A stretch of DNA of 64,000 nt, taken from the IMG/VR virus record IMGVR_UViG_3300042922_000542, positions 62,001-126,000 of that record; one strand, 5' to 3'. Of the stretch, positions 11,471 through 56,657 are shown piece after piece. Position 1 is the stretch's first letter. Every line of letters begins with the position of its first letter. Both the position numbers and the translations under genes were made by a program. A model generated the notes under the pieces. The model saw nothing but the letters and a program-made list of their open reading frames with translations. It was not told where the DNA came from and ran no database searches.

Positions 11471-14400
11471 GTGGTGAAAGTAATGTCTACTGCAAAAATT
11501 AGTGCAAAGAACGGATCAATTGCAGCGCCATATATTAAACGTGCATCCGGTTTATTAAAAGGCGCTACAGCGGAATATATTAGAGAATATATGCCAACAT
11601 CAGTATCTACAATTGAATCAATGAAAGATACGATCAAACCATTTTCAGCATCTATATCTAATGCTGGTAGTGTTATAGCTAAAACAAAAGAATTGACCGC
11701 TCAACAAAATTTGCGTAAAATAAATGATTGGTTTTTTGGAATGAATAGTTCATTCGATAATGGAAGTGCTGATTCGGATTTATCATTCGATATAGAAGTT
11801 GGTAATAGTAGTGAAATCATCATGGCGCAATTATCAGCTGAAGAAAGATCGGCTAATCAAATATCTAAAACTGTTGTTGAAACATCCCATAGGATGGTTG
11901 AGGCACAATTGTCTGCAACTGCAAATATACTAACATCTATGGACAAAGTCGGTGCAGCGGTTGTATCAGGATTCGATAATATCAATAATACTCTTAATAA
12001 ATTATTAGAAGTGACTACAAAAAATACAAGTGCATTGATTGCTACATCTGTAGCTGCATCAGTTGGATCGAATAGTAATAATCCAATGTTGAGCTCCGGT
12101 AAATTCAATCTTAATGCATACAAGAAATTGATATCTAGTAATGTCCAAGGTAGTGAATTTGGAATGCTTACTGCGATACTTCCAATATTGACTGGTAGTA
12201 TGGGAAGAGAAATGCTATCCTCTGATAATCTATCAAAGATGGGATTTGCTGCATTAATGAATAAAACAAATCCTAATTTAAAGAAAAACATGGAAGCCCT
12301 TGATAAATCTATAAATGGAATTTTAATGAATTCCCTTATAAGATTAGGTGATAAACGAGATCAGAATAATTTAATAGGAACACTTGGTAGAATTTTTGGA
12401 ATGGATACAAATCAAAAACGTCTATCAACAGGTCGAACAAATCTTGAATTTAAAGCTGTACCATTTGATACAGTTGCTAAAGAATCACTTGTTAGTACGA
12501 TACCTGGATATTTACGACAGATTTTAGTTCAATTAGGTGGACCGGATCAAATATATGATTATAGAAGTAGATCATTTAGAAGTAAGGGTGCAATAGCTCG
12601 TGATTTTAAAGATGCTGCGGCTACTAGTAATTCATTTAGATATGCAAGTGGAAGTGTACGTAATACCGTGGGTAGATATGGTAATAATGATGCTAATTAT
12701 AGTAATTTGCGTGATATGATCCATGATTTAATAATGGAGGATATGGGGGGTTCATCCCGTGATAGAAACCACGTATCGGCCCAACTGAGTAGTGAAGCAA
12801 CAGCCAAAAAATATATAAATTCATTATTGAAAAATAGCGGGATTAATAGAGGCAATGGTAGAGCCATAGGTCAATTGGCTAAGGGATACTCATCACTTGA
12901 TGCACAAGGATTATACGATCTTAGGCAACAATCAATAACATCTTCAATGAAACGTAATGCAAATTTACAGGAATATATTGATAATGCGAATATGTTCGGA
13001 GTAGATTTGTCATATATAAGTAATACGAGAGATGATAATAAAAATGAAATAATTAGACGATATACTGGTAAATCATCGAGTTCCATTATTAATTCCAAAT
13101 CAGGTATATCAACTGGCGGTACTGATTATACTAATTCTGCATTATATGAAATTTATAGACGTCTTAATACAGGCATAAACGTATTTCAAGTTGGGTCATC
13201 AAATGAAAAATCAAATAAATACAAATGGATCGGTAAATTACCGGCGCCATCGAGTCATTCTACCAATAGTGATTCTGAAACGGATAAAAGTTCTAAACCG
13301 TTAGTTTCATCGTTAACTGGCCATACGGATCATACAAATATGCTTCTAGAAGATGGTAAATCCGGTAAAGTTGGTAAATGGGCATCTGCATCTGGTAAAA
13401 ATCTCGTAAACGCATTATTCAATGGCAATGCTGAAGATGTGAGAATTGCATTCGGTCAGATGGTTGGGGACATATCTGAAGTTGCGTCCAAACCTATTAA
13501 AGATTTCTTAATTGGTAACGAATCTGCTAACAAGAAGGGTGTATTTGCGAAAATTAATGATTCATTTGGAAACGTTACAGGCTATTTTAAACATAAATTT
13601 ATGGGTACTGGATATGAATATACCGACGAATCTGGTAAAATGGTTAAAGTCGCTAACAATGAAAAAGGCGGTATAATTGGATATCTTAAAGATAACGTAA
13701 TGGATGTCTTTAAAGGTGGAAAAAATAAAGCAGGAAAATGGCTCAACGATGTTTATAAATATTTTGATTTTGGAAAATCAGAAGGCAACACATCATCGAA
13801 AAAGAGAGCAATAATATCGGCATCGGTTGGAGCTATGGCAGGTTTAGGATTTCTTGGAGGCCCGCTTGGATTGTTAACAGGTGCTATTGCTGGAACTGCA
13901 TTAGATAGTAGCAATTTTGGTAATATTTTAAAAGAAAAATTATTTGGTAAAGATGAATTCGACAAGGATGGTAAATCAAAACACAAAACTGGTATAATTG
14001 AAAAAGTAGTAAATAATATCACTGACCCATTGCGATACCAAATAGGAAAAACATTTGATACTGCTGGTAATGTTTTAAAGAAAAATATATTAGGACCACT
14101 ATCAGATATTGGATTCGCTATCAAGGAAAGGGCTTCAAATGCGGCAGGTAGTGCAGTCGGTAAATTCTTTAGTCAGATATTTAAAGGTGCTGGTTGGATT
14201 GCTAAACAAGCATTAAATATTCCATTGGCACTTGCTGGTATTCCAATAGCATACCAAGGTAATGCTGCAAGAGCTGGAATGCAAGTAGGTGGTGCGGTTG
14301 CTGGGACGGGAATGAATTTTATTGCCGATATGATTTCTGGTAAATCCGGTCGAGAGAAATTAAGAGATCGTCGCAAAGAAAGAGCTGATCAAATTAAAGC

Positions 14401-17400
14401 TGATAAAGATGCAAGTGGATACTATGAGGGCGGAGTATTTGGTAGTTATAAATCTTGGAAGAAGAAACAAGATGAAGCAAGATCAAATAAATCTAATTTA
14501 TCAGATTATATGGCATCCGACAAAACTGTTGTGGATGCTTCAATTAAAACTGAAGAGAATACATCCGCTATGGCAAAGGATATTGGTTCATTAACATATC
14601 ATGCAACACATCATGACCCAATTACGAATTCATCAATATATACTAGCGACAAAGGCGTATATGAAAAGATTACAGATATATTTGATTTACTTAAGAGACG
14701 ATTTGATGGTGGATCAGGATTATCTTCATTATCTGGTGCAGACGGAGTAAATTCAATATTAAGTGCGGCTTCTGGTATTGGAACACAAAGCGGGTTGTCA
14801 ATGGAAGATGTGGAAGATATTAGTTCAATCGCAGATGAATCTAATCGCGGTAAACCCAATAAAAGATCTATACTTTCTAGGTTTAAAAATTTACTTAAAC
14901 GTAATGCCTCAAGTAATAATACTGATGGGGTTAGTGAAAAATCCAAGGGTATGCTGAGTAATATTGCGGGATCAGTTGGTGATTTTATAAAGGACGTATT
15001 ACCAAGTTGGGCAGTCCCATTAGGTGGTTTGATGTTAAGTTTATTATCACCTGCAATCAAATCAATAGTATGGGGTGACGGTGAAAACGAAGGTATCGTG
15101 CCACAATTAGGTGCAGCAATATTAAGCTATATTACTGGTAACACATCTAATGAATCCGGCAGCACATCTTTACCTAAATCTATTGGAGGTATCAATAGTT
15201 CTTTAAATGAAATTGCTACAGGTCCATTACTATCAAATGCTAAAATTGGTGGTATCAATATTACGGGTAGTACAGATCCTATAGGATTATTTGGTACATT
15301 CAATAATAGTAAACGTGCTATATCAGGATTCAAAACATTAAAGAGTTCAGCATCGGCAGCATCTAAAGTTGTCAAAGAGTCAGTTCCATTAGCTCAACGA
15401 TTTGGTGCTAAATTTGCTGTGAAGGCTGCAATGACATCTGGTGCAAAAACTGTAACGCAAACTACATTAAAGGGAACAGCCGCCGGAATATTTAAAGGTG
15501 TTAAAGGATCAATTAAATTTTTATCAAGTTTACTGAGTTTCGCATTAGATAGTATAATAATGCTATTTCAAGGCAATGAAGTATTTGGTAAAGATAAATA
15601 TAGTGCATCATTAGTACAACAAGCATCTCTTATAATTGGAGGTGCATTAAATGGAACTGGTAGTGGATTTGCAGATGGTTTCCAATGGGCTGATATAATT
15701 GATATCGCCGGCAATGCATTAAAATGGACTGCGGTTGGTGCAGCGATGGGTTCTGTAGTTCCTATATTAGGTAACGGCATCGGTGCTGTATTAGGATTTA
15801 TATTAGGTCTTATACTTGGAATGTGGGGCGGTAAAACACTTGCGAAACAAATAGGGAATCTATTTGAAAATAGTGGAGCGTCTAGAGCTACGAATTATGT
15901 AGGTCGAGATTTATATGCAAAGGGTCATGGGTTTGGATCAGATGTATCTAGTTTTGTAAAGGGAATCGGTTCTAAGGCATTAAATTATATTAAGAGTGCC
16001 GCAGGTTCTATTGCAAACTATGTTAGTAGTATGACTGGTAAAGCCAAAGATATATTTAATTTGATGAAAAATTGTAATACAAATTCCGGAGTAAATGGAT
16101 ATTTAAAATTGATATCTGATATATCAAATATAGTATCTAATACTGGATCCGGTGGAGGAAGATCATTTGACTTGTTCTCTACAGCATATCGTGGTCATGG
16201 TTCAATGTATTATCAGGGTAATTACGGATCTGTTTTAGATATGAATCAATCTGGATGTGGACCAATTGCAGCTTCATATATAGCTAACTCATATGGAAGA
16301 AATATTACACCAATGCAGGCCGCTCAATTTTTAAATAATAGCGGCTTCAGAGATAGTTCAGGCGGAACATCTAGTTTAGGTATTGCTGCAATTAATAAAC
16401 AATTAGGAATTCCTATGGCATCTAGCGGTGTAAATATAAATGCGATTGGAAATAAATTATCCAGAGGAGAGCCTGTTGCGCTTCTAGGGAAATCGAATGA
16501 TCCTAATAGTCCATACACCAAATCAGGTCATTTTATTATAGCTGACGGTATGGATAGTTCGGGAAATATTACTGTAATGGATCCATTAAATCCTACGAAA
16601 AGAAAATATGATATCAATAGCATCATGAACGGTGCACAAGAAGCAACATATGCTGATGGTGGAGTTGGGTATGGGGATGAGTCTAAATTAAATAAAGGAA
16701 ATCCTCTCAATAAATCGTTCAGAATAACAAGTCCATTTGGTGATAACTCTCCATTTAGAGGTGGCATATCTCATCGTGGAGTTGATATGGTGCCACAGGA
16801 TGGATCAAAACAAGCACAAGTCGGTGCTGCATATAATGGAACAATAGTCGCAATTAAATCTAATATCCCAGATAGTTTTACTGGAATAAACGATAATACC
16901 AGGAGAAATTCAACTGGTAACTATGTGAGTTATAAAACACCACAAGGTATCACAGTAACTAATATGCATCTGAAAGCAAATAGTATACCATCGAATTTAC
17001 GCATTGGTAGTTCGATAAGACCTGGTGATAAAATTGGAGATATGGGATCGACTGGTATGTCTACAGGCCCTCACTTACATTATCAATTTAAAGATGATAA
17101 AGGAAACTATATTAATCCGACAGCATCAATAACAGGTGGTGCAACTATGAATAATTTCAATAGCTCTGCAAGCCCATACATTGCATCATCCAATGATGGT
17201 GGAATATTCTCGCAATTGAGTAGTATATTAGGTAATACTGCATCTAAGGTAATGAGTTTCTTTGGATTATCTGATTCATCTACAAGTTCATCTATTAATA
17301 CTACAGGTGATGCTAACTCATCAGACATAATATTCTCAAAGGCTAAGAATCTTGATACATCATATACGGACTATCCAGGTAGATCAATGGGAATCGAATC

Positions 17401-18400
17401 ATATCAATTAAATTTTATTCTTAAAGTAGCTCCGTCCGCACAGGCAACGATGGATTCAGGTGTGTTAGCTTCGGTACGTATAGCACAAGCTATTATAGAA
17501 TCAAATTGGGGGCGTTCAAGTCTTACAACAGAGGGTAATAATTTATTCGGTATGAAAGCATTCGCTGGTTGGTCTGGGCGTCGTATAAGTAAACCAACTA
17601 AAGAATGGAGTGCGTCTAGTGGAAATTATCAAACTAATGCTAGTTTTAGAGCATACGGTAGTTGGGATGAGAGTATTGCAGACCAAGCTAATAACTATAC
17701 CAAAGTTTCAGCTTATAAAAGTTCTGGCTTACTTGGAGAAAAAGATTATAGACAAGCCTGTATTAAGATACAAAAATCAGGTTATGCGACAGACCCGGCA
17801 TATGCTAATAAATTAATACAGATGGTTGATCGATATCAATTAACCTATTTCGATCATCCTGTAACTAAAGGTGCAACTGCTAGCAGTCGTTACTATTCCA
17901 ATAGAATGACGATGCAAGACATGGCTGCATTAAATATGTCATCGGATAATAATCCTATGGGTGGTGGTATTCCGTCATATGATAATTCTGGGAGTTCTAT
18001 ATTTACTTCACGTAAATCAAATGTACCGAATGCCGGTTATGGAAATAAATCTTCATCACGTAAAATTAATCGTGGTTATGGAGCTAAGTTCCCTAATGCT
18101 ATAGGTGGATCATTTAGCGATACATATGAATACGATCAAAATATTAAAAGTGCATCAGGTATGGGCATGGGTAATATCAATGAAAAACTAGAATTATTAT
18201 TATCTGCAGCTCTTAATGAATTAAAGGCAATCAATAATAATACGGGTGGTTCTACATCTGCATTGCAAGAATTAGTAAGTGCCAGTGGAAATAATGGTTC
18301 TGGTTCACAAACTAAAACTGCGACACGTAGATCGTCAGCACCCCCATTGAATAATAACTCTAACATATCATCAGTATTATCAATTGTAAAACCTTTATAA
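11471..18400 (+). CDS. Tape-measure-like tail protein with C39-like peptidase, M23 peptidase and GH73 glucosaminidase domains
   Basis: Long Gly/Ala/Ser-rich helical N-terminal region. C39-like: SGCGPIAA...GHFII...MDP. M23: HRGVD...MHL...STGPHLHY. GH73: AQAIIESNWG...NNLFGMK...GYATDPAYANKLI. Likely ATG at 11483. Confidence 0.85.
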   Translation: MVKVMSTAKISAKNGSIAAPYIKRASGLLKGATAEYIREYMPTSVSTIESMKDTIKPFSASISNAGSVIAKTKELTAQQNLRKINDWFFGMNSSFDNGSADSDLSFDIEVGNSSEIIMAQLSAEERSANQISKTVVETSHRMVEAQLSATANILTSMDKVGAAVVSGFDNINNTLNKLLEVTTKNTSALIATSVAASVGSNSNNPMLSSGKFNLNAYKKLISSNVQGSEFGMLTAILPILTGSMGREMLSSDNLSKMGFAALMNKTNPNLKKNMEALDKSINGILMNSLIRLGDKRDQNNLIGTLGRIFGMDTNQKRLSTGRTNLEFKAVPFDTVAKESLVSTIPGYLRQILVQLGGPDQIYDYRSRSFRSKGAIARDFKDAAATSNSFRYASGSVRNTVGRYGNNDANYSNLRDMIHDLIMEDMGGSSRDRNHVSAQLSSEATAKKYINSLLKNSGINRGNGRAIGQLAKGYSSLDAQGLYDLRQQSITSSMKRNANLQEYIDNANMFGVDLSYISNTRDDNKNEIIRRYTGKSSSSIINSKSGISTGGTDYTNSALYEIYRRLNTGINVFQVGSSNEKSNKYKWIGKLPAPSSHSTNSDSETDKSSKPLVSSLTGHTDHTNMLLEDGKSGKVGKWASASGKNLVNALFNGNAEDVRIAFGQMVGDISEVASKPIKDFLIGNESANKKGVFAKINDSFGNVTGYFKHKFMGTGYEYTDESGKMVKVANNEKGGIIGYLKDNVMDVFKGGKNKAGKWLNDVYKYFDFGKSEGNTSSKKRAIISASVGAMAGLGFLGGPLGLLTGAIAGTALDSSNFGNILKEKLFGKDEFDKDGKSKHKTGIIEKVVNNITDPLRYQIGKTFDTAGNVLKKNILGPLSDIGFAIKERASNAAGSAVGKFFSQIFKGAGWIAKQALNIPLALAGIPIAYQGNAARAGMQVGGAVAGTGMNFIADMISGKSGREKLRDRRKERADQIKADKDASGYYEGGVFGSYKSWKKKQDEARSNKSNLSDYMASDKTVVDASIKTEENTSAMAKDIGSLTYHATHHDPITNSSIYTSDKGVYEKITDIFDLLKRRFDGGSGLSSLSGADGVNSILSAASGIGTQSGLSMEDVEDISSIADESNRGKPNKRSILSRFKNLLKRNASSNNTDGVSEKSKGMLSNIAGSVGDFIKDVLPSWAVPLGGLMLSLLSPAIKSIVWGDGENEGIVPQLGAAILSYITGNTSNESGSTSLPKSIGGINSSLNEIATGPLLSNAKIGGINITGSTDPIGLFGTFNNSKRAISGFKTLKSSASAASKVVKESVPLAQRFGAKFAVKAAMTSGAKTVTQTTLKGTAAGIFKGVKGSIKFLSSLLSFALDSIIMLFQGNEVFGKDKYSASLVQQASLIIGGALNGTGSGFADGFQWADIIDIAGNALKWTAVGAAMGSVVPILGNGIGAVLGFILGLILGMWGGKTLAKQIGNLFENSGASRATNYVGRDLYAKGHGFGSDVSSFVKGIGSKALNYIKSAAGSIANYVSSMTGKAKDIFNLMKNCNTNSGVNGYLKLISDISNIVSNTGSGGGRSFDLFSTAYRGHGSMYYQGNYGSVLDMNQSGCGPIAASYIANSYGRNITPMQAAQFLNNSGFRDSSGGTSSLGIAAINKQLGIPMASSGVNINAIGNKLSRGEPVALLGKSNDPNSPYTKSGHFIIADGMDSSGNITVMDPLNPTKRKYDINSIMNGAQEATYADGGVGYGDESKLNKGNPLNKSFRITSPFGDNSPFRGGISHRGVDMVPQDGSKQAQVGAAYNGTIVAIKSNIPDSFTGINDNTRRNSTGNYVSYKTPQGITVTNMHLKANSIPSNLRIGSSIRPGDKIGDMGSTGMSTGPHLHYQFKDDKGNYINPTASITGGATMNNFNSSASPYIASSNDGGIFSQLSSILGNTASKVMSFFGLSDSSTSSSINTTGDANSSDIIFSKAKNLDTSYTDYPGRSMGIESYQLNFILKVAPSAQATMDSGVLASVRIAQAIIESNWGRSSLTTEGNNLFGMKAFAGWSGRRISKPTKEWSASSGNYQTNASFRAYGSWDESIADQANNYTKVSAYKSSGLLGEKDYRQACIKIQKSGYATDPAYANKLIQMVDRYQLTYFDHPVTKGATASSRYYSNRMTMQDMAALNMSSDNNPMGGGIPSYDNSGSSIFTSRKSNVPNAGYGNKSSSRKINRGYGAKFPNAIGGSFSDTYEYDQNIKSASGMGMGNINEKLELLLSAALNELKAINNNTGGSTSALQELVSASGNNGSGSQTKTATRRSSAPPLNNNSNISSVLSIVKPL

Positions 18401-30144: not shown

Positions 30145-30915
30145 ATGAAATCATTTATAAAAAATCAATATCAAACATCAAACGATGATGGTAAAAAACA
30201 TATAATATTATGGTCAGGGGGTTGTGATTCATCACTATTGTTGTATGAACTATTAGATGCGTATGGAAGCGAAAATGTTATAGCTATAAGTTATAAATAT
30301 TCATGGTTAAATTCAACAAAAGCTGAAATCGAACATAACTATAGAGAAGCATTTAAAAATAAGATGAAATTACTCGGATCCAATTTTGCAAATTTTACTC
30401 ATCATGTATTTGAAATAAATGATGTTTGTGACTCAACTGATGTTCAATTACGACCAATGCATGGTCTACCGCAAGCATTAGGATGGTTATTTATGATACC
30501 GATGTATGCTAATGAAAATGCATACATTTACTCTGGATATATTAAAGATGATGACCTTACTACTTCTGGATTTAAAGAATACTATAATGATATATTTGAA
30601 TCAGTTAATAAGTTAATCGGAAGAGATAATATTTCGTTACGACTTCCATATATAGGTAAATCCAAAATTGATATTATCGAGAAACTTATATATCATGGCT
30701 TATATGATGTAGCGTGGTATTGTGAAATACCTAGTGATGATCATAATATGTGCATGAAATGCCATCCATGCAAAACGCACATGGCAGCATTGGTATATTT
30801 ATCGATGTTCAGTGAAGATGAATTAGTTAAGTTAACAGCTATACGTAAACTTGAATATATGAAATCATTACAAAATGAAAATAATAAACATGATGACACA
30901 TTGGAATTTGCATAA
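30145..30915 (+). CDS. QueC-like PP-loop ATPase with Zn site
   Basis: ILWSGGCDS PP-loop; PYIGKSKIDII; C-x9-CxxCxxC (WYCEIPSDDHNMCMKCHPC). Confidence 0.7.
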   Translation: MKSFIKNQYQTSNDDGKKHIILWSGGCDSSLLLYELLDAYGSENVIAISYKYSWLNSTKAEIEHNYREAFKNKMKLLGSNFANFTHHVFEINDVCDSTDVQLRPMHGLPQALGWLFMIPMYANENAYIYSGYIKDDDLTTSGFKEYYNDIFESVNKLIGRDNISLRLPYIGKSKIDIIEKLIYHGLYDVAWYCEIPSDDHNMCMKCHPCKTHMAALVYLSMFSEDELVKLTAIRKLEYMKSLQNENNKHDDTLEFA

Positions 30916-48558: not shown

Positions 48559-48625
48559 TTTTATAATAAAGGGTGGAACTATCCACCCTTTATTTTTTAG
48601 TTAATCGCATATAACTAGTGTTTTA

Positions 48626-48636
48626 TTATATATTAT
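48626..48636 (+). promoter_or_regulatory. TTATATATTAT promoter-like motif
   Basis: Exact copy 40 nt before ATG 48676. Confidence 0.6.
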
Positions 48637-48675
48637 ATTAATATGAATGATAAGAATAATTTGGAGGTTTTTAAA

Positions 48676-49179
48676 ATGGAAAAGGAAATAAAAACTGTTG
48701 ATATTAAATGCACCGCACATTTTGAAATCGTTGGTGTGGATAAAAATGCTCTTAATCTTAGAATGTATGTCGATGAACTAATTAAAAATGATATGTTTAC
48801 ACTCCAACATCATGGAGGACGATATGCAAAAAATGATGCGAAATTATGTTGTACTAGTAATAGAATTAATATTTTATCTAATCGACGTAATGGCGGTAGA
48901 GTTCATCCGTGTTGCGGGTTTAATTGTGAAGTTGATTTTTCTAAGGAGGAAGCAAGTATTCTCATATCAGCTCATGTTGATAATTATACAACAGGTGAAG
49001 AAATAGATGTTAACTTTAGATTTGTTACATGCATTAGAGGTATGAAAGAAGTAGACAAATATAAGCGAATGCTGGACGAGTTCAATGAAAAAAGAATTAT
49101 TGAGGAGGCCGAAGCTACAAAAAGAGAAATTATTGAAAAAGAAAATGCCGAGAGAATTATGGATTTTCTGAGATCATAA
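48676..49179 (+). CDS. Hypothetical protein, paralogue family A
   Basis: SD GGAGGT before ATG 48676. The pattern IxCxAxFxI...LxMxVxxLIxN is shared with 52870 and 53371. Confidence 0.7.
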   Translation: MEKEIKTVDIKCTAHFEIVGVDKNALNLRMYVDELIKNDMFTLQHHGGRYAKNDAKLCCTSNRINILSNRRNGGRVHPCCGFNCEVDFSKEEASILISAHVDNYTTGEEIDVNFRFVTCIRGMKEVDKYKRMLDEFNEKRIIEEAEATKREIIEKENAERIMDFLRS

Positions 49180-49193
49180 AATAGGAGGAATAA

Positions 49194-49568
49194 ATGTGTA
49201 TAAAAATAATAGATACAACTGAATATCGAACTATATGTTTACACACTAAAAACAATGATTGTTTATTTAAGGCCAAGGTCTTTACATTTAATAATCGTAT
49301 TATATTGCGATGCAGTATAAATAAATTCTATTATAGTACGCATTTACTTGAAAATTCTGGCAATATCGAATATATCGAAAAATTTATCCAGGAATATGAT
49401 CGATTTCAAAAAATAAATTGGAATAGTGAATTAGAAAAATGGTATAATGGAATGCCTAAATTTGGAATGAAACTATGTCAAGAATATGATTTTATATTAA
49501 ATAAAATACGTTCTATATTTAATAATATATCAAATGAAATTGATCTTGTTATGGTTGAATATTTATAA
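49194..49568 (+). CDS. Hypothetical protein
   Basis: SD AGGAGG; 124 aa. Confidence 0.7.
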   Translation: MCIKIIDTTEYRTICLHTKNNDCLFKAKVFTFNNRIILRCSINKFYYSTHLLENSGNIEYIEKFIQEYDRFQKINWNSELEKWYNGMPKFGMKLCQEYDFILNKIRSIFNNISNEIDLVMVEYL

Positions 49569-49629
49569 AAAACTATGCAGAAATACAATATGATTTATAT
49601 TAAAAAAATAAAATTATAAGGAGATAATT

Positions 49630-50097
49630 ATGAAAAATATTACAAAGGTATTTATTATTACAATCGTGGCGTTAATGATATCATCACTGTCAATTACTAT
49701 GGCAGCTTCTTCTCCATCATTAGAAAAACCTAAATATACTATAGGTACTGGAGGACCTGTTACACCTGCTAAAGAATATGTTATTGGTACTGGAGGACCT
49801 GTTACACCTGCTAAAGAATATGTTATTGGTACTGGAGGACCTGTTACACCTGCTAAAGAATATGTTATTGGTACTGGAGGACCTGTTACACCAACTAAGG
49901 AATATGTTATTGAGATGGGTCTAATCAATATTAACTATAATGCAGAAGATGATCAAGTATTATTCACATTTGTTGTGGATATCCCTAATATTGGTATGTT
50001 TGAATGTAAAGCAGTTGCAAATGAATTTAAACATAACTCCGAACAAGATACTGTTAATTCAGAAAAATTTATGAAGTATATTAAAAGTCAAAAATAA
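49630..50097 (+). CDS. Exported protein with Sec signal peptide and 4x 14-aa repeat
   Basis: MKNITKVFIITIVALMISSLSITMA-A signal peptide; (GTGGPVTPAKEYVI)x4. Confidence 0.8.
   Translation: MKNITKVFIITIVALMISSLSITMAASSPSLEKPKYTIGTGGPVTPAKEYVIGTGGPVTPAKEYVIGTGGPVTPAKEYVIGTGGPVTPTKEYVIEMGLININYNAEDDQVLFTFVVDIPNIGMFECKAVANEFKHNSEQDTVNSEKFMKYIKSQK
49744..49911 (+). repeat. 42-bp coding tandem repeat x4
   Basis: Unit GGTACTGGAGGACCTGTTACACCTGCTAAAGAATATGTTATT: three identical copies plus one variant, in frame, no spacers. Confidence 0.95.
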
Positions 50098-50240
50098 AAT
50101 AAGTTAGGGACATTATCCCTAACTTATTTTTTATATATTGAGGATGATCGTTTATATCCGCAGTATATAATAATTCAAATTCAAGTGTAAAAATTATATT
50201 ACATAATATATTTTAAAAATAAAATTATAAGGAGATAATT

Positions 50241-51218
50241 ATGAAAAATATCACAAAAATATTTATTATCATAATGATCATAATGATGATATCATCACTG
50301 TCAATAGCAATGGCTGCTTCTTTCCCATCATTAGAAAAACCTAAATCTACTATTGATATTGAAATACCAGTTACAACGAGTCAAGCAATATATAATGTTG
50401 GTACTATAGTTACTGGTATTGATGCGGCTAAACAATTAACGATAGATTCAAATAATAATATATACTATATCGATTTCTATAATAATGAGCGTAATAAACT
50501 CATGTGTATCACCGATGGTATTATTGATGTAGTTGCAGATGGTGGAACAGAAAAAGCTCGGGTACTGGATTTAATTAATATTGTATATGACCCAAAAGAA
50601 GATCGCGTATTATTACTATGCAATGTCAATTCAGGATATTATGCTTATAATTCCGAATTCATTGGAACATCTGCGATATATGATGTTGCTGATTTATCTG
50701 CACCGATAGCTACTTTCCAAGAAGGGTATTTTACATCTTTCTCTAATCCTATTATGTTGAATAATGTAATTATTAATAATGGATTAAGATTTGATATTAA
50801 TGCATCCACTACAACAATATTTACTGGTGGATATTATTCAATATATAATAGAATAATTGATAAACAATATATCACATTTGATGGTATATTTCGTAAATTT
50901 AATCTATCATTGAATAAAGAAATTGAAATCTCTGTAGATTTTGACAACATAAAAACTGTAGATTCAATATCATCCTATAATGATAAATTTTATTTATACT
51001 CGAAAGATGATTGTAGTTTCTATGAAATTGATACTAGAAATGATAATCCTAAAGCTGAATTATTTATAGCGGGGGATGAATTGATTATAAATGATTTTCT
51101 ACCATTTAGTAGTGTTGAGGAATTTACATTTATCAATGATGGTGAAATAATATTCTATGATAATATTAATAAAGCTATCAGAACTATATCTGTTCAAGAA
51201 ACAAATGGAGGAATATAA
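50241..51218 (+). CDS. Exported protein, possible beta-propeller (NHL-like)
   Basis: Signal peptide nearly identical to that of 49630; blade-like QLTIDSNNNIYYID and FINDGEIIFYDNINKAIRTI. Confidence 0.7.
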   Translation: MKNITKIFIIIMIIMMISSLSIAMAASFPSLEKPKSTIDIEIPVTTSQAIYNVGTIVTGIDAAKQLTIDSNNNIYYIDFYNNERNKLMCITDGIIDVVADGGTEKARVLDLINIVYDPKEDRVLLLCNVNSGYYAYNSEFIGTSAIYDVADLSAPIATFQEGYFTSFSNPIMLNNVIINNGLRFDINASTTTIFTGGYYSIYNRIIDKQYITFDGIFRKFNLSLNKEIEISVDFDNIKTVDSISSYNDKFYLYSKDDCSFYEIDTRNDNPKAELFIAGDELIINDFLPFSSVEEFTFINDGEIIFYDNINKAIRTISVQETNGGI

Positions 51219-51266
51219 GATAACTTGCAATAATTAATATTATATATAAAAATTGAAAGGACGACA

Positions 51267-51863
51267 ATGATTATGAAAGCAAAAGAGTATTTTAAGCAAT
51301 TATGTGATGACAGCTCTCCATTACTTTTTGCGGCTAGGATTAATAATATTCATTCGAGCATGGTCAATGAAATAAAAAATTTAATAGCAGTACGCCATAT
51401 TCAAAGAGATGAAAGTCGATTGAGTGTATTAAAAGAAATGGATAATAAATGGAAGGCTATTGTACGACTTGTACATAAATCATCATACGATATTGATATA
51501 GACGATGATGAATTCATATTATACATGTATGACAATGTACCAGAGTTTAAAAAATTCATCCATGTAGAAAAATGTATTGATGAAAATACCGACGATGGAA
51601 AAGAAAATATTCCTTATGTTCATAAACTTGTACCTCTCAATGAAATAACTGATGATAACATTAAATATGAAATATTAGAATGTATGTATGCAATTGGTAA
51701 GTACAGTGATATGGATATACCATTAAATTCATTAACACCATTAATCCATAGAGTAACGTTATTGCGATACTGGAAGAAAAATGGAATAAACTATGAACAA
51801 ATTGATGAATTTGAAAAAGATCGAGATGAATTTGTGAATAATGTTATTAGACCGATGATGTAA
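51267..51863 (+). CDS. Hypothetical protein
   Basis: SD AAGGA; 198 aa. Confidence 0.75.
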   Translation: MIMKAKEYFKQLCDDSSPLLFAARINNIHSSMVNEIKNLIAVRHIQRDESRLSVLKEMDNKWKAIVRLVHKSSYDIDIDDDEFILYMYDNVPEFKKFIHVEKCIDENTDDGKENIPYVHKLVPLNEITDDNIKYEILECMYAIGKYSDMDIPLNSLTPLIHRVTLLRYWKKNGINYEQIDEFEKDRDEFVNNVIRPMM

Positions 51864-51902
51864 ATTAAATAAAATTAAATAAATAAAATTTCATAAAATA
51901 AT

Positions 51903-52760
51903 ATGGGTGGGGGATATAAATTTAATATGAAAAATAATTTAAGATTGATTATAATATCGGCGATAATGTTAGTTATAATCATGATTGTACCAGTTTTTGC
52001 TACAACCACTGATTATATTAATCAGTCATTCATAGCTGAATTTCCAGTATTGGAAGACGGATATACTATATTTATCGATGATGATGTTGTGGTCACTGAA
52101 GATTTTATCGGCAATACAATTCAACCATTCTATGTAGAGGGAGTAATGTATTTACCAGTAGATACTGTTGTGCATGCAATGGGTAAAAATATTATTGAAT
52201 GGAATGATTCATATTTAATGACTGAAACATATCGATATGATGACGGTTCCGCTAATGTTAATAATGAATTTATTGATCAATCAAATCAAAATAATATTAT
52301 CAATACTTATGATTCAACTGAAGACCCATACAACTATATACTGGAGAACCTTAATATATTAAATTGGATAGGTGCACCTGAATTACTAGTACTAATTGAA
52401 AATGGGTCTAATGTAAGTGATTTAGTTAATCAAGAATATGTGGATGCATGTATGGGCATCGTAGTACATTGGTATGGGGAAATATTACGGCCGCATCAAA
52501 CAATAATTAGTGTAATGATAGCACTATTAATCATATTTGGAATCGGGAAATTTGTGATTGATACTATAGCGCAGACACGTAATGACAAAAAAGATGCGGA
52601 ATTAAAAGAATCTACAAATGAGTACATATTAAATTTAGAGAAACAAATAAAAGAATTAAAAGTATTTGCAGAACTTGATCAATCGGCTATTAATAAATAT
52701 AAAACCGAAATTGAATCATTAAATAATCAACTGAATATGTATAAATTTAAGATGAAGTAA
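51903..52760 (+). CDS. Exported/membrane protein with copper-amine-oxidase-N-like domain, TM helix and coiled coil
   Basis: Signal MKNNLRLIIISAIMLVIIMIVPVFA (probable start 51927); PFYVEGVMYLPV...AMGK..IEW motif; TM TIISVMIALLIIFGIG; C-terminal coiled coil. Confidence 0.65.
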   Translation: MGGGYKFNMKNNLRLIIISAIMLVIIMIVPVFATTTDYINQSFIAEFPVLEDGYTIFIDDDVVVTEDFIGNTIQPFYVEGVMYLPVDTVVHAMGKNIIEWNDSYLMTETYRYDDGSANVNNEFIDQSNQNNIINTYDSTEDPYNYILENLNILNWIGAPELLVLIENGSNVSDLVNQEYVDACMGIVVHWYGEILRPHQTIISVMIALLIIFGIGKFVIDTIAQTRNDKKDAELKESTNEYILNLEKQIKELKVFAELDQSAINKYKTEIESLNNQLNMYKFKMK

Positions 52761-52818
52761 ACTAAAATTAATTATAAGATAGGGATGTTTCCCTATCTTA
52801 TTTTTTATTAATAATAAT

Positions 52819-52829
52819 TTATATATTAT
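52819..52829 (+). promoter_or_regulatory. TTATATATTAT promoter-like motif
   Basis: Exact copy 41 nt before ATG 52870. Confidence 0.6.
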
Positions 52830-52869
52830 CAATTTATATAAAATTCAAATAAAACTGGAGGCTGCAAAA

Positions 52870-53352
52870 ATGTCTAAACAAATTACGAAATATCAACAAG
52901 CAGAACCGATCACATTTATGATTAATTGTGAGGCTGATTTCAGAATTGCTAAATTCAATACAATATCACCTAAATTAAAGATGATAATTACTGAGTTAAT
53001 AAATAATAAAAATTTTGAATTAGCATATGGAAATGATGCAATGACTGAAATGTATGGACCACATATAAAATCAAAACTGCAATTTATAAAACTCATTGCT
53101 GGAAATTTATACCCAGGTAATCCATATGGTTATGACGTTACGATTGAAGGTTCATCCGCGTACTTTATTATACCAGTCACTATAGAAGATACATCAAGTC
53201 AAATTGAATCTGAATATTATGATGCCGTATTAAAATTCATTGGAACGATTCCTAATAGAGTTATGCTTAATTACCAAAACGAAATTAATAGATGTAACGG
53301 CACTACTCAACAAATTAATCTTGCAATTGATTATTCAAATTCAATTAAATGA
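52870..53352 (+). CDS. Hypothetical protein, paralogue family A
   Basis: SD GGAGG; INCEADFRI...LKMIITELINN...GYDVTIEGSSAYF. Confidence 0.75.
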   Translation: MSKQITKYQQAEPITFMINCEADFRIAKFNTISPKLKMIITELINNKNFELAYGNDAMTEMYGPHIKSKLQFIKLIAGNLYPGNPYGYDVTIEGSSAYFIIPVTIEDTSSQIESEYYDAVLKFIGTIPNRVMLNYQNEINRCNGTTQQINLAIDYSNSIK

Positions 53353-53370
53353 TACAGGAGATTTTAAATT

Positions 53371-53889
53371 ATGCATAATTACAACTTTTATGAAAGCGAT
53401 ATAATATTTTTAAAAAGACCACATTGCATTGAAATTAAATGTGAGGGTCAATTCAAAATAATAGATAACATGGAAAATAATGCACCACCTACTATAAGAA
53501 TGCGTGTAACAAAATTAATTGATAACGAATTCTTTATGTTAGATTATACAGATTACAATGAGAGCAAGTATGATGTCGGACCTAAACTTGTTCCAGTACC
53601 TGTATTTGTTAAAAATATTGGTAGACCGATATATCCATCTATTCAAGAAGGATATGAAATTGAAATTAAGGGCAGTGATGCTCATTTTACAATAGATTCG
53701 ATTAATTTTGAAATTACATCAGATATTTATAAAAAGGATGTAATCGGTGTCATATTAGACTTTAGCGCAATAATTCCAAATGATATTCTAATCAATTTTA
53801 ATATAGCTACAGATGAATTTAATGCATACGCACTTAAACAAATTGAAGAAGCTAAAAAATTAATGAAATATATTGGAATGGATAACTGA
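53371..53889 (+). CDS. Hypothetical protein, paralogue family A
   Basis: SD AGGAG; IKCEGQFKI...IRMRVTKLIDN...GYEIEIKGSDAHF. Confidence 0.75.
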   Translation: MHNYNFYESDIIFLKRPHCIEIKCEGQFKIIDNMENNAPPTIRMRVTKLIDNEFFMLDYTDYNESKYDVGPKLVPVPVFVKNIGRPIYPSIQEGYEIEIKGSDAHFTIDSINFEITSDIYKKDVIGVILDFSAIIPNDILINFNIATDEFNAYALKQIEEAKKLMKYIGMDN

Positions 53890-54010
53890 TATAAATCGAA
53901 CTAATAATATTGTATAATTAAATAAATGATTGAGATGGATTCGATCCATCTCAATCTATTTTTTTATATATGTGATTGTATTAATAATATCGCATGTCTT
54001 ATGATGTATT

Positions 54011-54021
54011 TTATATATTAT
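54011..54021 (+). promoter_or_regulatory. TTATATATTAT promoter-like motif
   Basis: Exact copy 32 nt before ATG 54053. Confidence 0.6.
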
Positions 54022-54052
54022 AAAGATAATAAATAATTAGGAGGATTAAAAG

Positions 54053-54802
54053 ATGAAAAAAATAAATAAATTTGGTTATATTTTAATAGGTATAATATTT
54101 GCAATGTTTATAGGAACAACGCCGATTTCTGCATCAACAAACTATGTTGCAAAACAGTTAACCGCGTATTTTCTACCGGAGGAAAAAATTATTTCGATAT
54201 TTGCAGATGGTAAACAATTTACACAAGATGCGAATGGTAATAAATATAAACCATTCATTATTGATGGTACTATGTATTTACCAGTTAAAGATGTTGCAAA
54301 TCTGTTGGGAAAAGAAGTACAGTGGTTCGAAGATCAATCATCGCTATCATTTAAAGATACATACTTGGCATCCCCAGATAATTCCGATAATGTAAATGCA
54401 ACACTTACCACAATTATTGACAATAATGGTGATCGTCAAGATAAATTGACTTATAAATTTACATTGGATGAAGAAGCTGTAGGGCAATGGAAAATGTTCC
54501 ATTATTATAATAGCTTAAATGATTTTACACCTGCATTGACACCCATACAAAATTTTGATTGGACTGGTAATACATTACAACCTGATGGAACATTGATAAT
54601 GCATAATAGTCATCCTGAAAGTGGGGACTTTGTCTCGAAATGGACTAATGGCTATTTTGTAAGTGCTCGTGGGATGAGTGGTGTTCCAGCATATAAAATA
54701 ACTACTATCGGTGATAGAATGTTTATGGTATTAGAATGGAAGAGTGGAGATTATGCTAGAAATGGTAGTATAAGTTATTATGTATTTGAAAAAATAAAAT
54801 AG
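54053..54802 (+). CDS. Exported protein with copper-amine-oxidase-N-like (stalk) domain
   Basis: Signal peptide ending PISA; IFADGK...DANGNKYKPFIIDGTMYLPVKDVANLLGKEVQW, typical of clostridial surface proteins; C-terminal ...EWKSGDY...YYVFEK domain. Confidence 0.75.
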   Translation: MKKINKFGYILIGIIFAMFIGTTPISASTNYVAKQLTAYFLPEEKIISIFADGKQFTQDANGNKYKPFIIDGTMYLPVKDVANLLGKEVQWFEDQSSLSFKDTYLASPDNSDNVNATLTTIIDNNGDRQDKLTYKFTLDEEAVGQWKMFHYYNSLNDFTPALTPIQNFDWTGNTLQPDGTLIMHNSHPESGDFVSKWTNGYFVSARGMSGVPAYKITTIGDRMFMVLEWKSGDYARNGSISYYVFEKIK

Positions 54803-54839
54803 GTTAGGGCTAATACCCTAACCTATTTTTTTATATAAT

Positions 54840-56657
54840 TTATATTTCAGCCGTATCGTCTTGTGCACCTTCAGCACTATAATCAATGAATATACATTGA
54901 TTTCCAGATATTAATAGTTTAACTAACTCGCTAGCAGCCATTAATACATTAACATCTGTCTCTACTGAAGTTATTACTTTATCACTATATTTAAGGCTTT
55001 CTAAATCGAATACTTTATTAGATTTAATTGATTCACTTATTATTTCAACGCATTTATGATTGATAATATCCACGAGCTGATTTGCATCAGTAAGCTCACT
55101 AACATTAGGAATCATCTTAATTATTCCATTATTTTCAGGACCATGCAATACTTTAGCATATAAATTTGTTGATGCATTTTTTATTAATTGAATTATTTCA
55201 ATTCTTAAAATATCATCCGGTGTTTTAACATCCACTGCATTAGATAATAACTCTTCACATGCTCTAACAATCGAAATTTGACATCCCGGTACAATACCAT
55301 ATTTAGATGCAGATGCAACAGCCTTGATAACATCATCGACCGTATCATATAAAATATTCGCTTGTAATGTTGAATCAGCTCCTACATAATAAATGAAATT
55401 CTCCATCTTCAATTGAGATATTCTTGCATTAATTTTAGCGATATCTGCAGCATATGCTTTTCTATCATTATCGATCTTAGATAATATGCTTTCTAATTCA
55501 ATTTCAGCATTATGTAATTGCTGTTGATATTTTTGATTCTCTGTCAAATCATCGACTGTGAATACAGATCCGTCATAAATTGATAATGAAGCACTTTTAA
55601 TATTACCAAGTATATCAAATTTATTCTCAGTAATTATGTCATATTTATCAATAGTACTAGCTGCCATTAATTCATCATTAATTGTTTTAAATAAATCCAT
55701 TGTAATAGGCTGGCATCCTATTATAACTGATAAATCTTCCATCTGGGATGGAGCCAAGCTACCATATTTATATTGTGTTAATATTAAATTTAAGCCGTTA
55801 TTATTTCTATATTCAGCATTTATGTAATTTTTCAATACAGTTTTAGCTAATAGCTCATCATATGCTGGTGCAAGAATTAATATCTTTTCATTGTTAGGAC
55901 GATAAATCTCATTTACGGTTTTAATAAAATTTGTGAATGTGTCATTATCTATTTTATAATCGAATAATAACACTTTAACATTTTCCTCTGTTGTGCTTAA
56001 ATCTTCATTTTTACAATAAGCTTCATCAATTAGATTAGCCGGAAATTCAAAACCCTTAACTGTTCTAATATAGCTCTTATTAGTAGGGGAATTTTTAAGT
56101 TTAATAACAGGTGATTTAGCAGCATTATAAATCTCCGATATATTTTTACTGATTTCAATATTACCATTGGATGCTATATAAGCTACGTCATAAATCATCT
56201 GATTGTCCTCAATTAAAGTGCCATACGATTTTACTAGCTCGGTGATTTCTTCAATGCTTCTATCCCAAGTGTGTGTGAATGTTCTTGGCAGACGATATAA
56301 TCTATCGAGTGTTTCTTTTCGTTGCATATATTTATTGAATAAAATGTTTGTCATCACTATTGCAGTTGTTGTTGCATCCCCAACTGTGTTATTTAATTTA
56401 ACGCATGGTGCCTTAATTAAATTATAAATCATAGTTTTATATTTATTACGGAATCTCATATTTTTAAATATTGTAAATCCGTCTTTTGTTGCTGATGTAT
56501 AAGCACCATCGATAATTAATGAATGCGATCCCAATGGTCCTAATGATTTACCTAGTGTTTCAGCAATTGTTGAGAAAACTTCTAAAGCTAATGTATTAAA
56601 CTCTTCAGCTTTCATAATATTGGCATTTGTTTTATTACTGTAATCTAAAAAATTCAT
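54840..56657 (-). CDS. groEL: Phage-encoded GroEL/Cpn60-like chaperonin
   Basis: LGKSLGPLG, TKDGFTI, VGDATTTA, YGIVPG; 605 aa. Confidence 0.85.
   Translation of the reverse strand: MNFLDYSNKTNANIMKAEEFNTLALEVFSTIAETLGKSLGPLGSHSLIIDGAYTSATKDGFTIFKNMRFRNKYKTMIYNLIKAPCVKLNNTVGDATTTAIVMTNILFNKYMQRKETLDRLYRLPRTFTHTWDRSIEEITELVKSYGTLIEDNQMIYDVAYIASNGNIEISKNISEIYNAAKSPVIKLKNSPTNKSYIRTVKGFEFPANLIDEAYCKNEDLSTTEENVKVLLFDYKIDNDTFTNFIKTVNEIYRPNNEKILILAPAYDELLAKTVLKNYINAEYRNNNGLNLILTQYKYGSLAPSQMEDLSVIIGCQPITMDLFKTINDELMAASTIDKYDIITENKFDILGNIKSASLSIYDGSVFTVDDLTENQKYQQQLHNAEIELESILSKIDNDRKAYAADIAKINARISQLKMENFIYYVGADSTLQANILYDTVDDVIKAVASASKYGIVPGCQISIVRACEELLSNAVDVKTPDDILRIEIIQLIKNASTNLYAKVLHGPENNGIIKMIPNVSELTDANQLVDIINHKCVEIISESIKSNKVFDLESLKYSDKVITSVETDVNVLMAASELVKLLISGNQCIFIDYSAEGAQDDTAEI

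What the first reader, a model, noticed from the sequence alone, without database searches (positions are those of the whole stretch)
49630..54802. Island of host-like exported envelope proteins
Four signal-peptide proteins lie within 5 kb. Two share the PF-x-x-x-G-x-MYLPV motif of the copper-amine-oxidase-N/stalk domain used by clostridial surface proteins, and one is propeller-like. A lytic phage decorating the host envelope suggests superinfection exclusion, receptor masking or long-term carrier-state infection.
Basis: partly seen in the sequence, partly recalled or inferred. Interest (0 to 1): 0.6.

Follow-up and report, generated by a model that had tools for sequence, protein, structure and literature searches.

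The report
Exported-protein gene island in jumbo phage
A complete 246-kb soil jumbo phage carries a 6-kb island coding for four proteins with secretion signals, one clearly copied from Gram-positive bacteria, so the phage probably puts its own proteins on or outside the infected cell; what they do there is untested.

Summary
Genes A (49630-50097), B (50241-51218), D (51903/51927-52760) and G (54053-54802) each begin with a canonical Sec-type signal peptide. A rule-based screen I wrote passes 6 of 254 ORFs in the 246-kb genome, and four of those are these genes. D and G are paralogues that share the PF07833 (Cu_amine_oxidN1) core motif. B models confidently as a six-bladed NHL-type beta-propeller.

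Additional findings:
- The genes form two paralogue pairs, A/B and D/G. They are interleaved with three cytoplasmic paralogues.
- There are four terminator-bounded transcription units. Three are preceded by the AR9-type early (virion RNA polymerase) promoter motif.
- The island sits in the replication/recombination region, not in a virion module.
- G, including its signal peptide, has full-length relatives (34-51% identity) in a multi-copy family of Bacillota genomes.
- B's close relatives are only on phage-like contigs, and D and A have none.
- D is a type-I membrane protein. A complex model supports pairing of the D and G PF07833-like domains (0.70 against a best control of 0.00).

"Host-like" is firm only for G. 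Superinfection exclusion or receptor masking is plausible but untested. No known exclusion, sortase, SLH or lipoprotein feature is present. I rate this a new variant of the recently described envelope-directed proteins of huge phages.

The parts
48565..48594 (+). Intrinsic terminator after the SbcC-like gene. It marks the left border of the island.
   Evidence: 13-pair stem followed by a T run. The region has 11 terminator-like sites against 1.8 expected.
48627..48643 (+). Early-promoter-like motif TATATATTAT-N5-TA in front of unit 1.
   Evidence: The motif matches the AR9 early consensus AAATATATATTAT-6N-+1 (PMC5312081).
48643..49179 (+). 178-aa cytoplasmic protein, the third paralogue of E and F. 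First gene of unit 1.
   Evidence: blastp against F gives E 7e-6. No signal peptide.
49194..49568 (+). 124-aa ORF of unknown function in unit 1.
   Evidence: no family match.
49630..50097 (+). Gene A, 155 aa: signal peptide, then four 14-aa repeats (KEYVIGTGGPVTPA), then a tail of about 55 aa. Its leader, signal peptide and first mature codons are a duplicate of those of B.
   Evidence: The 29 nt before the ATG are identical in A and B and occur nowhere else in the genome.
49733..49912 (+). In-frame 42-bp tandem repeat inside A, 4.3 copies, 95% matches.
50096..50130 (+). Intrinsic terminator that ends unit 1.
50241..51218 (+). Gene B, 325 aa: signal peptide followed by a six-bladed NHL-type beta-propeller.
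51267..51863 (+). Gene C, 198 aa: no signal peptide, function unknown, same transcription unit as B and D.
   Evidence: nothing usable.
51903..52760 (+). Gene D, 285 aa (277 aa if it starts at ATG 51927). It has a signal peptide, a PF07833-like ectodomain, a transmembrane helix (residues 194-212 of the long form) and a K/E-rich coiled-coil-like cytoplasmic tail.
52774..52801 (+). Intrinsic terminator that ends unit 2 (B-C-D).
52820..52836 (+). Early-promoter-like motif in front of unit 3.
52870..53352 (+). Gene E, 160 aa: cytoplasmic paralogue of F.
   Evidence: E against F gives 32% identity, E 5e-14.
53371..53889 (+). Gene F, 172 aa: cytoplasmic paralogue of E.
53928..53956 (+). Intrinsic terminator that ends unit 3.
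54012..54028 (+). Early-promoter-like motif in front of G.
54053..54802 (+). Gene G, 249 aa: signal peptide, PF07833 domain (about residues 30-105) and a lipocalin-like eight-stranded beta-barrel (about residues 112-249). It belongs to a Bacillota multi-copy family.
54796..54829 (.). Bidirectional intrinsic terminator shared with the convergent GroEL-like gene (54840-56657, minus strand).

Best explanation
**What it is.** The stretch is an accessory-gene island in the early/replication region of a complete, non-integrating jumbo phage of the AR9/PBS1 type. The phage is 246 kb, has 29% G+C, comes from a soil metagenome and probably infects a low-G+C Bacillota host.

**Layout.** Four terminator-bounded units encode four Sec-exported proteins and five cytoplasmic proteins: three paralogues of one small family (48643-49179, E, F), gene C and the 49194-49568 ORF.

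**How it most likely works.**
- Units 1, 3 and 4, and therefore A and G, are probably read early by the injected virion RNA polymerase (inferred from the promoter motif).
- The host Sec machinery exports the products (inferred from canonical signal peptides that are conserved in relatives).
- G was acquired from Bacillota, export signal included. Outside the cell it presents a lipocalin-like barrel on a PF07833 domain. The one solved Gram-positive PF07833 example is a dimerisation module.
- D stays in the membrane as a type-I protein, with a paralogous PF07833-like ectodomain and a cytoplasmic coiled coil. It may hold G at the cell surface by heterodimerising with it (supported by the complex model only).
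- B is a secreted NHL-type propeller, a typical ligand- or glycan-binding scaffold. It is linked to a D-like gene in a second, related phage contig.
- A is a partial duplicate of B's export cassette fused to a fast-evolving repeat.

**Proposed role.** The most likely purpose is to occupy or remodel the surface of the infected cell. That could mean masking or binding wall or membrane receptors to exclude other phages, or preventing wasteful re-adsorption. This last step is inference and has not been shown.
For: **Export**
- All four proteins have n/h/c regions with AXA-like sites.
- The signal peptide is conserved in relatives of B and G.
- Ribosome-binding sites sit at the long starts.

**Clustering**
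- Four of the six signal-peptide-like ORFs in 246 kb lie within 5.2 kb.

**Paralogy**
- A/B, D/G and E/F are paralogue pairs.
- A and B share about 150 nt of leader plus signal peptide.

**Protein G**
- PF07833 at the cut-off.
- A profile of G and eight relatives matches the dimerising N-terminal domain of P. lautus SOD, 8imd, at E 4e-5 (PMC10432803).
- Full-length relatives in bacterial contigs and MAGs.
- Domain matches in 117 of 149 genomes of one Bacillota order.
- The barrel fold matches 4gzv at Z 8.0.

**Protein B**
- Model at pLDDT 80.
- Matches to PknD (TM 0.63 normalised to the target), Pizza6 (0.69) and PAL.
- phmmer hits to NHL proteins and to the C-termini of SLH proteins.
- A B-like gene is followed by a D-like gene in contig L012.

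**D-G pairing**
- Score 0.70 against a best control of 0.00. The mark was reached by 58 of 80 solved complexes and 2 of 110 mismatched pairs.
- The three runs agree in at least 97% of contacts, and the partner's pLDDT is at least 75.

**Timing and place**
- The motif TATATATTAT-N5-TA has 35 intergenic copies out of 43 and sits before units 1, 3 and 4. It equals the AR9 early promoter.
- The neighbours are DNA polymerase, topoisomerase II, ligase, SbcC, RusA, GroEL and an RNA polymerase beta subunit.
- No integrase was found.

**Concept**
- A 2026 preprint reports that huge phages encode signal-peptide-bearing envelope proteins.
Against: - There are no expression or localisation data. The only sequencing run that holds the DNA is the probable source sample, and it is DNA.
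- There is no similarity to any known superinfection-exclusion, defence or lysis protein.
- A, B and G have no wall-anchoring signal, so they may simply be released into the medium.
- Unit 2 (B-C-D) lacks the early motif.
- The role of PF07833 in Gram-positives is unsettled: it dimerises in PaSOD and is listed among predicted cell-wall-binding modules elsewhere.
- The D-G model may only reflect likeness to a homodimerising family.
- The barrel match (Z 8) is at the level the tool calls common.
- The phage has no close relatives in the phage and IMG/VR collections searched; B-like genes on two short AT-rich contigs are the only trace of kin. Conservation of the island therefore cannot be judged.
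- The host is unknown.
Confidence: 0.4

Rival explanations
1. The exported proteins act on small molecules or polymers outside the cell rather than on phage receptors. B could be an NHL/SGL-type enzyme, such as a lyase or lactonase. G's barrel could be a ligand binder. Possible roles are signal interference, nutrient capture, or effects on wall turnover, sporulation or germination.
For: - NHL-type propellers among B's structural matches include enzymes: PAL (3fvz) and streptogramin lyase (2qc5).
- G's barrel resembles lipocalin and avidin-type ligand binders.
- PF07833 is found joined to PepSY/YpeB, PdaC and SOD domains in Bacillota.
- A, B and G have no surface anchor.
Against: - No catalytic family matched any of the proteins.
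- The fold matches are generic.
- D is membrane-anchored and is predicted to pair with G, which points to the cell surface rather than the medium.
Confidence: 0.2
2. The genes are largely neutral cargo. They would be recent captures and local duplications in a variable spot of a large genome, with little or no role in infection. A would be a decaying partial copy of B.
For: - A is a partial duplicate with a young 42-bp repeat.
- D has no relatives beyond its N-terminal domain.
- No related phage in IMG/VR shares the island.
- Bacterial relatives of G and of B's propeller often sit next to resolvase, YqaJ, RadC or DUF932 genes, which is mobile-element cargo.
Against: - All frames are intact and have good ribosome-binding sites, their own terminators and promoter motifs.
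- B is kept at 59-67% identity in two other phage-like contigs, and the adjacency of a B-like and a D-like gene is kept in one of them.
- G keeps the invariant residues of its family.
Confidence: 0.15
3. The proteins are virion or adsorption components. The propeller could be a receptor-binding module, and the hydrophobic N-termini would not be secretion signals.
For: Beta-propeller 'virion structural proteins' of jumbo phages PhiPA3 and Noxifer are among B's structural matches in the viral library.
Against: - The matches are at the level of the generic fold (TM about 0.5, 10-16% identity).
- The N-termini are canonical Sec signals and are conserved in bacterial relatives that are plainly secreted proteins.
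- The island lies among replication genes and carries early-promoter motifs.
- Tailed-phage virions assemble in the cytoplasm (established knowledge).
Confidence: 0.07

Closest known systems
Envelope-associated proteins of huge phages (Yuan & Chen, bioRxiv 10.64898/2026.10.24.761521): sortase B with signal-peptide substrates, PspA and outer-membrane beta-barrels
   Same: - A phage above 200 kb encodes proteins with signal peptides aimed at the host envelope.
- Some resemble host proteins.
- Superinfection exclusion is the proposed role, and it is untested in both cases.
   Different: - This phage has no sortase, cell-wall sorting signal, SLH domain or outer-membrane barrel.
- The domains here (PF07833, NHL propeller, lipocalin-like barrel) are not mentioned in that paper (0 occurrences).
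- The source here is soil rather than the gut.
Bacillota 'stalk domain' / Cu_amine_oxidN1 (PF07833) secreted proteins, including Paenibacillus lautus PaSOD (PDB 8imd)
   Same: - G has the same order of parts: signal peptide, PF07833 domain, then an effector domain.
- It is 34-51% identical over its full length to bacterial family members.
- It matches the PaSOD N-terminal dimerisation domain.
   Different: - G is encoded by a phage.
- It has one C-terminal barrel where most of the bacterial relatives examined have two to four.
- D joins the domain to a membrane anchor and a coiled-coil tail, an architecture for which no relative was found.
Phage superinfection-exclusion proteins that act at the envelope: Ltp of Streptococcus phage TP-J34, Sie2009, T5 Llp and T4 Imm/Sp (from my own knowledge)
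   Same: - They are small phage-encoded exported or membrane proteins that are not part of the virion.
- An ESM Atlas cluster joins an Ltp domain (PF07553) to PF07833. This is a weak structural neighbour of D.
   Different: - No sequence similarity was found, and there is no lipobox.
- Several of the known examples (Ltp, Sie2009) are prophage-encoded, whereas this phage appears to be non-integrating.
- No function has been tested here.
NHL-repeat six-bladed propellers such as the extracellular sensor domain of M. tuberculosis PknD (1rwi)
   Same: - Both are six-bladed propellers with an extracytoplasmic location.
- The first and last blades of B carry NHL-like sequence.
   Different: - Pfam NHL does not match B.
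- The middle blades are highly diverged.
- B's closest relatives lie on phage-like contigs.

Membership tests
Sec-type (signal peptidase I) signal peptide | Positive n-region, hydrophobic h-region of about 12-20 residues, small residues at positions -3 and -1, and a polar mature protein | tested here: met
   - All four proteins meet manual and scripted rules.
- The feature is conserved in homologues.
- No trained predictor such as SignalP or DeepTMHMM was available.
Pfam PF07833 Cu_amine_oxidN1 ('stalk' domain): protein G | Score at or above the gathering cut-off of 24.2 bits | tested here: met
   - 24.2 bits, E 3.4e-5, and 25.3 bits in the six-frame search.
- Only profile positions 11-46 of 108 are covered.
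- The family profile matches 8imd residues 17-78 at E 4e-5.
Pfam PF07833 Cu_amine_oxidN1: protein D | Score at or above the gathering cut-off of 24.2 bits | tested here: not met
   - 12.9 and 13.1 bits, so the cut-off is not reached.
- Kinship rests instead on paralogy to G (E 1e-9), 26-31% identity with 12 invariant columns against the family, and PF07833 neighbours in the ESM Atlas at TM below 0.5.
NHL repeat propeller (PF01436): protein B | Pfam NHL repeats above the cut-off, and a six-bladed propeller fold | tested here: inconclusive
   - No Pfam match.
- phmmer matches residues 60-105 to NHL repeats of many proteins, best E 3.8e-12.
- The model is a six-bladed propeller (pLDDT 80). It matches PknD at TM 0.63 (normalised to the target) and Pizza6 at 0.69.
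Lipocalin/calycin-like barrel: C-terminal domain of G | Eight-stranded antiparallel barrel that matches solved calycins well above background | tested here: inconclusive
   - Foldseek best E 2.6e-3.
- VIA Z 8.0, rmsd 3.3 A over 95 residues against 4gzv. The tool itself calls this level common.
- Model pLDDT in this domain is 61-91.
Known superinfection-exclusion and defence proteins (PHROGs, PADLOC, Pfam Ltp) | Sequence match to a described family; a lipobox for the Ltp and Llp type | tested here: not met
   - No match was found.
- None of the four signal peptides contains a Cys.
Sortase- or SLH-anchored surface proteins | A C-terminal sorting signal plus a sortase, or SLH domains | tested here: not met
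   - The phage has no sortase and no SLH domain.
- The C-termini of A, B and G are polar, with no (L)PXTG motif followed by a hydrophobic tail.
AR9-type early (virion RNA polymerase) transcription unit | Conserved AT-rich element TATATATTAT with the start site 6 nt downstream | tested here: met
   - The motif with a conserved TA five bases downstream sits before 48643, E and G. The consensus comes from PMC5312081.
- It is absent before B.
- Transcription itself was not testable.

The most novel reading that the evidence does not exclude
The phage builds its own surface complex on the infected Gram-positive cell. Membrane-anchored D would capture the host-derived protein G through heterodimerisation of their PF07833-like domains. 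Together with the secreted propeller B, this complex would block receptors early in infection. That would be a superinfection-exclusion system of a lytic jumbo phage made from domains never before linked to exclusion, and it would give PF07833 its first defined role in phage-host conflict.
Probability: 0.2. Interest if true: 0.7.

Novelty: new variant of a known kind. Interest (0 to 1): 0.45.

Why it matters
- Proteins that lytic phages export to the surface of Gram-positive cells are poorly known.
- PF07833 is one of the most expanded uncharacterised extracellular domains of Bacillota. G-family domains (PF07833 and/or the C-terminal barrel) matched in 117 of 149 genomes of one order here.
- A phage copy with a predicted membrane-anchored partner offers a handle for testing what the domain does.
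- If the island excludes other phages, it adds a new protein class to exclusion and receptor-masking systems.
- It would also support the recent claim that huge phages remodel the host envelope.
- If it does not, it remains a clear case of host-to-phage transfer of a secreted protein together with its export signal.

Tried and rejected
**Searches that found nothing**
- Megablast of the island against 50,697 phage records: no match.
- tblastn of G against the phage records: only two partial hits on short faecal contigs.
- IMG/VR scans with the B family, the G family and the GroEL-like protein: none.
- JGI metagenome scan with the B family: none.
- Word search for D: only the protein itself.
- B in the three MAGs that hold G relatives, and the B family in 149 genomes of that order: not found with these queries.
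- NCBIfam and PADLOC: nothing relevant.
- ESM Atlas search for C: nothing usable.
- Own-genome searches for integrase, Amidase_3, sortase and SLH: none.
- Sigma-70 promoter scan: no more sites than in shuffled sequence.
- The AR9 late motif AACA-N6-TA is not present upstream of A or B (read).

**Rejected reading**
- The minus-strand ORF 49614-49928 is the antisense reading of A's repeat, not a gene.

**Tools and steps not used**
- Read laying was not used. The only run that holds the DNA is the probable source sample, and it is kept as contigs.
- No alternative genetic code was used.


Full report
**Setting**

The window is bases 62001-126000 of a single 246,147-bp contig. It is an IMG/VR virus record with direct terminal repeats and an estimated completeness of 100%. 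The only public run that holds the stretch is a soil metagenome, which is probably the source sample.

G+C is about 29%. AGGAGG-type ribosome-binding sites are strongly enriched upstream of genes, as is usual for phages of Bacillota.

The genes around the finding are:
- DNA polymerase, two topoisomerase II subunits, NAD-dependent ligase and a QueC-like gene;
- an SbcC-like ATPase, a GroEL-like chaperonin, RusA and a split RNA polymerase beta subunit.

The chaperonin's best matches, at 22-25% identity, are to jumbo phages of the AR9/PBS1 group: Listeria LPJP1, Staphylococcus PALS_2 and Bacillus AR9. No tyrosine integrase was found. The island therefore sits in the replication/recombination part of a distant, non-integrating AR9-like jumbo phage. 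It is not in a virion or lysis module.

**The observation**

Between 49630 and 54802 there are seven + strand genes. Four begin with canonical Sec signal peptides:
- A, 155 aa
- B, 325 aa
- D, 285 aa, or 277 aa from the better-placed ATG at 51927, which follows a GGTGGGGGA ribosome-binding site
- G, 249 aa

A rule-based screen I wrote for all 254 ORFs of the genome passes six. Four are these genes; the other two are membrane-anchor-like proteins of 93 and 102 aa.

A public gene call had started B at Met16, which would remove the signal. Three things show that the long start is right:
- the AAGGAG site lies 7 nt before the first ATG;
- the 29-nt leader is identical to that of A;
- B's homologues P0006 and P0007 also have signal peptides.

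The motif G..MYLPV occurs only in D and G in the whole genome. The caveat is that A/B and D/G are paralogue pairs (blastp E 3e-7 and 1e-9), so the cluster represents two families rather than four.

**Anatomy**

The region has 11 terminator-like hairpins against 1.8 expected. They cut it into four units:
1. 48643-49179, 49194-49568 and A
2. B, C and D
3. E and F
4. G

The 10-mer TATATATTAT occurs 43 times in the genome. Thirty-five of these copies are intergenic, mostly 16-60 nt upstream of a start codon, and have a conserved TA five bases downstream. This is the core and the geometry of the AR9 early promoter, AAATATATATTAT-(6N)-+1, which the injected virion RNA polymerase reads (PMC5312081). 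The motif precedes units 1, 3 and 4 but not unit 2. Early expression of A and G is therefore inferred, not shown.

The proteins 48643-49179, E and F are three paralogues of an unknown cytoplasmic protein.

**Protein G**

- *Pfam.* PF07833 (Cu_amine_oxidN1) matches at the cut-off: 24.2 bits and 25.3 bits.
- *Relatives from the word search.* Three were found at 42-51% identity over the full length. One lies in a 97-kb bacterial contig among ABC transporters and two-component systems.
- *Relatives in species genomes.* A scan found full-length relatives (34-41%) in three Bacillota MAGs. A profile search of 149 genomes of that order found domain matches in 117, with up to 17 per genome, and full-length matches in about eight.
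- *Architecture.* The full-length bacterial proteins examined carry two to four copies of the C-terminal domain, whereas the phage protein has one.
- *Signal peptide.* It is conserved between phage and bacteria: MKKINKFGYILIGIIF... against MKKINKFGYIAIGMIL....
- *Tree.* G groups with P0002 (support 100/98) among the bacterial family members (midpoint-rooted tree of nine rows). P0002 lies in a tandem pair on a contig of 34% G+C.
- *N-terminal domain.* The family profile matches the N-terminal domain of Paenibacillus lautus Cu/Zn-SOD (8imd) at E 4e-5. That domain forms the homodimer in the crystal structure (PMC10432803). Another paper lists PF07833 among predicted wall-binding modules, so its role is unsettled.
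- *C-terminal domain.* It models as an eight-stranded barrel that resembles bacterial lipocalin-like proteins. Foldseek gives E 2.6e-3 and VIA gives Z 8.0 against 4gzv. This match is borderline.

G is the one clearly host-like protein of the island.

**Protein D**

No relative was found for the whole protein. Its N-terminal 90 residues align with the G family at 26-31% identity with 12 invariant positions. Pfam scores only about 13 bits. Its ESM Atlas structural neighbours are nearly all PF07833 proteins of Bacillota, with TM below 0.5.

After a variable region come a transmembrane helix (residues 194-212) and a K/E-rich tail that looks like a coiled coil. D is thus a type-I membrane protein with the domain outside the cell.

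A complex model of the D and G N-terminal domains passed the tool's mark:
- score 0.70, best of three controls 0.00;
- the mark was reached by 58 of 80 solved complexes and 2 of 110 mismatched pairs;
- the runs agree in at least 97% of contacts, and the partner's pLDDT is at least 75.

The tool warns that paralogues of a self-associating family can pass by likeness alone. I therefore read the result as showing that the domains are dimerisation-competent and that a D-G pair is plausible.

**Protein B**

Pfam and PHROGs give nothing. The exhaustive HMMER search found one close relative. It also found many NHL-repeat proteins that match residues 60-105 (best E 3.8e-12), and several proteins whose C-termini match residues 111-318. 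Two of the latter carry N-terminal SLH domains.

The AlphaFold model (pLDDT 80.3, pTM 0.74) has about 25 strands. It matches six-bladed NHL-type propellers: the PknD sensor domain at TM 0.63 (normalised to the target), Pizza6 at 0.69, PAL and teneurin.

The two close homologues, at 67% and 59% identity, lie on short AT-rich contigs.
- In one (L012), a D-like gene with a signal peptide and the motif YPFFIEGSLYLPV follows directly.
- In the other (L013), the neighbour is a homologue of an unrelated gene of this phage.

B is therefore a phage-lineage gene with only remote bacterial kin. It was not found in the 149 genomes that hold G's relatives. The pairing of a B-like gene with a D-like gene recurs.

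**Protein A**

A shares about 150 nt of leader, signal peptide and first mature codons with B. It then carries a 42-bp in-frame repeat (4.3 copies, 95% matches) and a short tail. It looks like a young partial duplicate of B's export cassette.

**Interpretation**

- *Shown by sequence.* This is an island of exported proteins, partly derived from the host, organised as separate terminator-bounded units, and lying outside the structural modules.
- *Inferred.* Some units are transcribed early, the products are exported by the host Sec system, and D and G pair at the membrane.
- *Hypothesis.* The products occupy or remodel the infected cell surface to mask receptors or exclude other phages.

Nothing ties the proteins to known exclusion systems. 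There is no lipobox and no Ltp, Sie or PADLOC match. There is no sortase and no SLH domain.

The rivals are extracellular ligand binding or enzymatic roles, neutral cargo, and virion components. They are weighed in the rival explanations.

**Comparison with what is known**

A preprint of October 2026 reports that huge phages encode envelope-directed proteins, among them sortase substrates with signal peptides, and it proposes selective superinfection exclusion. It does not mention PF07833, NHL or propellers. PHROGs, the 50,697 phage records and IMG/VR gave no relative of these proteins beyond two partial hits. I therefore rate the island as a new variant of a known kind. It is of moderate interest, and its function is untested.

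Noticed in passing
whole genome; window 48627, 52820, 54012, 45928, 34540, 31195 and others: The motif TATATATTAT-N5-TA occurs 43 times in the genome, 35 of them intergenic. It has the core and spacing of the AR9 early (virion RNA polymerase) promoter. This suggests that this distant phage keeps the same early-promoter grammar, with A rather than G at the presumed start site.
   Followed up: partly
genome 54637-54748 (about 7.3 kb before the window): Six copies of the early-promoter-like motif are packed on both strands into about 110 bp of an AT-rich intergenic stretch. The purpose is unknown; it could be a divergent promoter array or an origin-like region.
   Followed up: no
window 48643-49179, 52870-53352, 53371-53889: These are three paralogues of a cytoplasmic protein of about 170 aa with no family match. 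They are interleaved with the exported genes.
   Followed up: partly
L004 (G002), L009 (G085), L002, L017/L018: Bacterial relatives of G and of B's propeller often lie next to mobile-element genes (resolvase, YqaJ, RadC, DUF932) or next to AAA_15/AAA_21 ATPases, which I recall as typical of defence islands (own knowledge). These families may travel as cargo of mobile elements.
   Followed up: partly
window 30145-30915: A QueC-like gene (PHROG 1550, E 4.5e-30) lies among the replication genes. It hints at a 7-deazaguanine-type DNA modification pathway.
   Followed up: no
window 11471-18400: A 2309-aa ORF lies in a stretch of raised G+C (0.34-0.37 against about 0.29 elsewhere). It was not examined.
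   Followed up: no
window 54840-56657 (minus strand): A 605-aa GroEL-like chaperonin converges on G and shares its bidirectional terminator. It is only 22-25% identical to the chaperonins of AR9-like phages.
   Followed up: partly
window 49614-49928 (minus strand): This 104-aa ORF is the antisense reading of A's 42-bp repeat and is very probably not a gene.
   Followed up: yes
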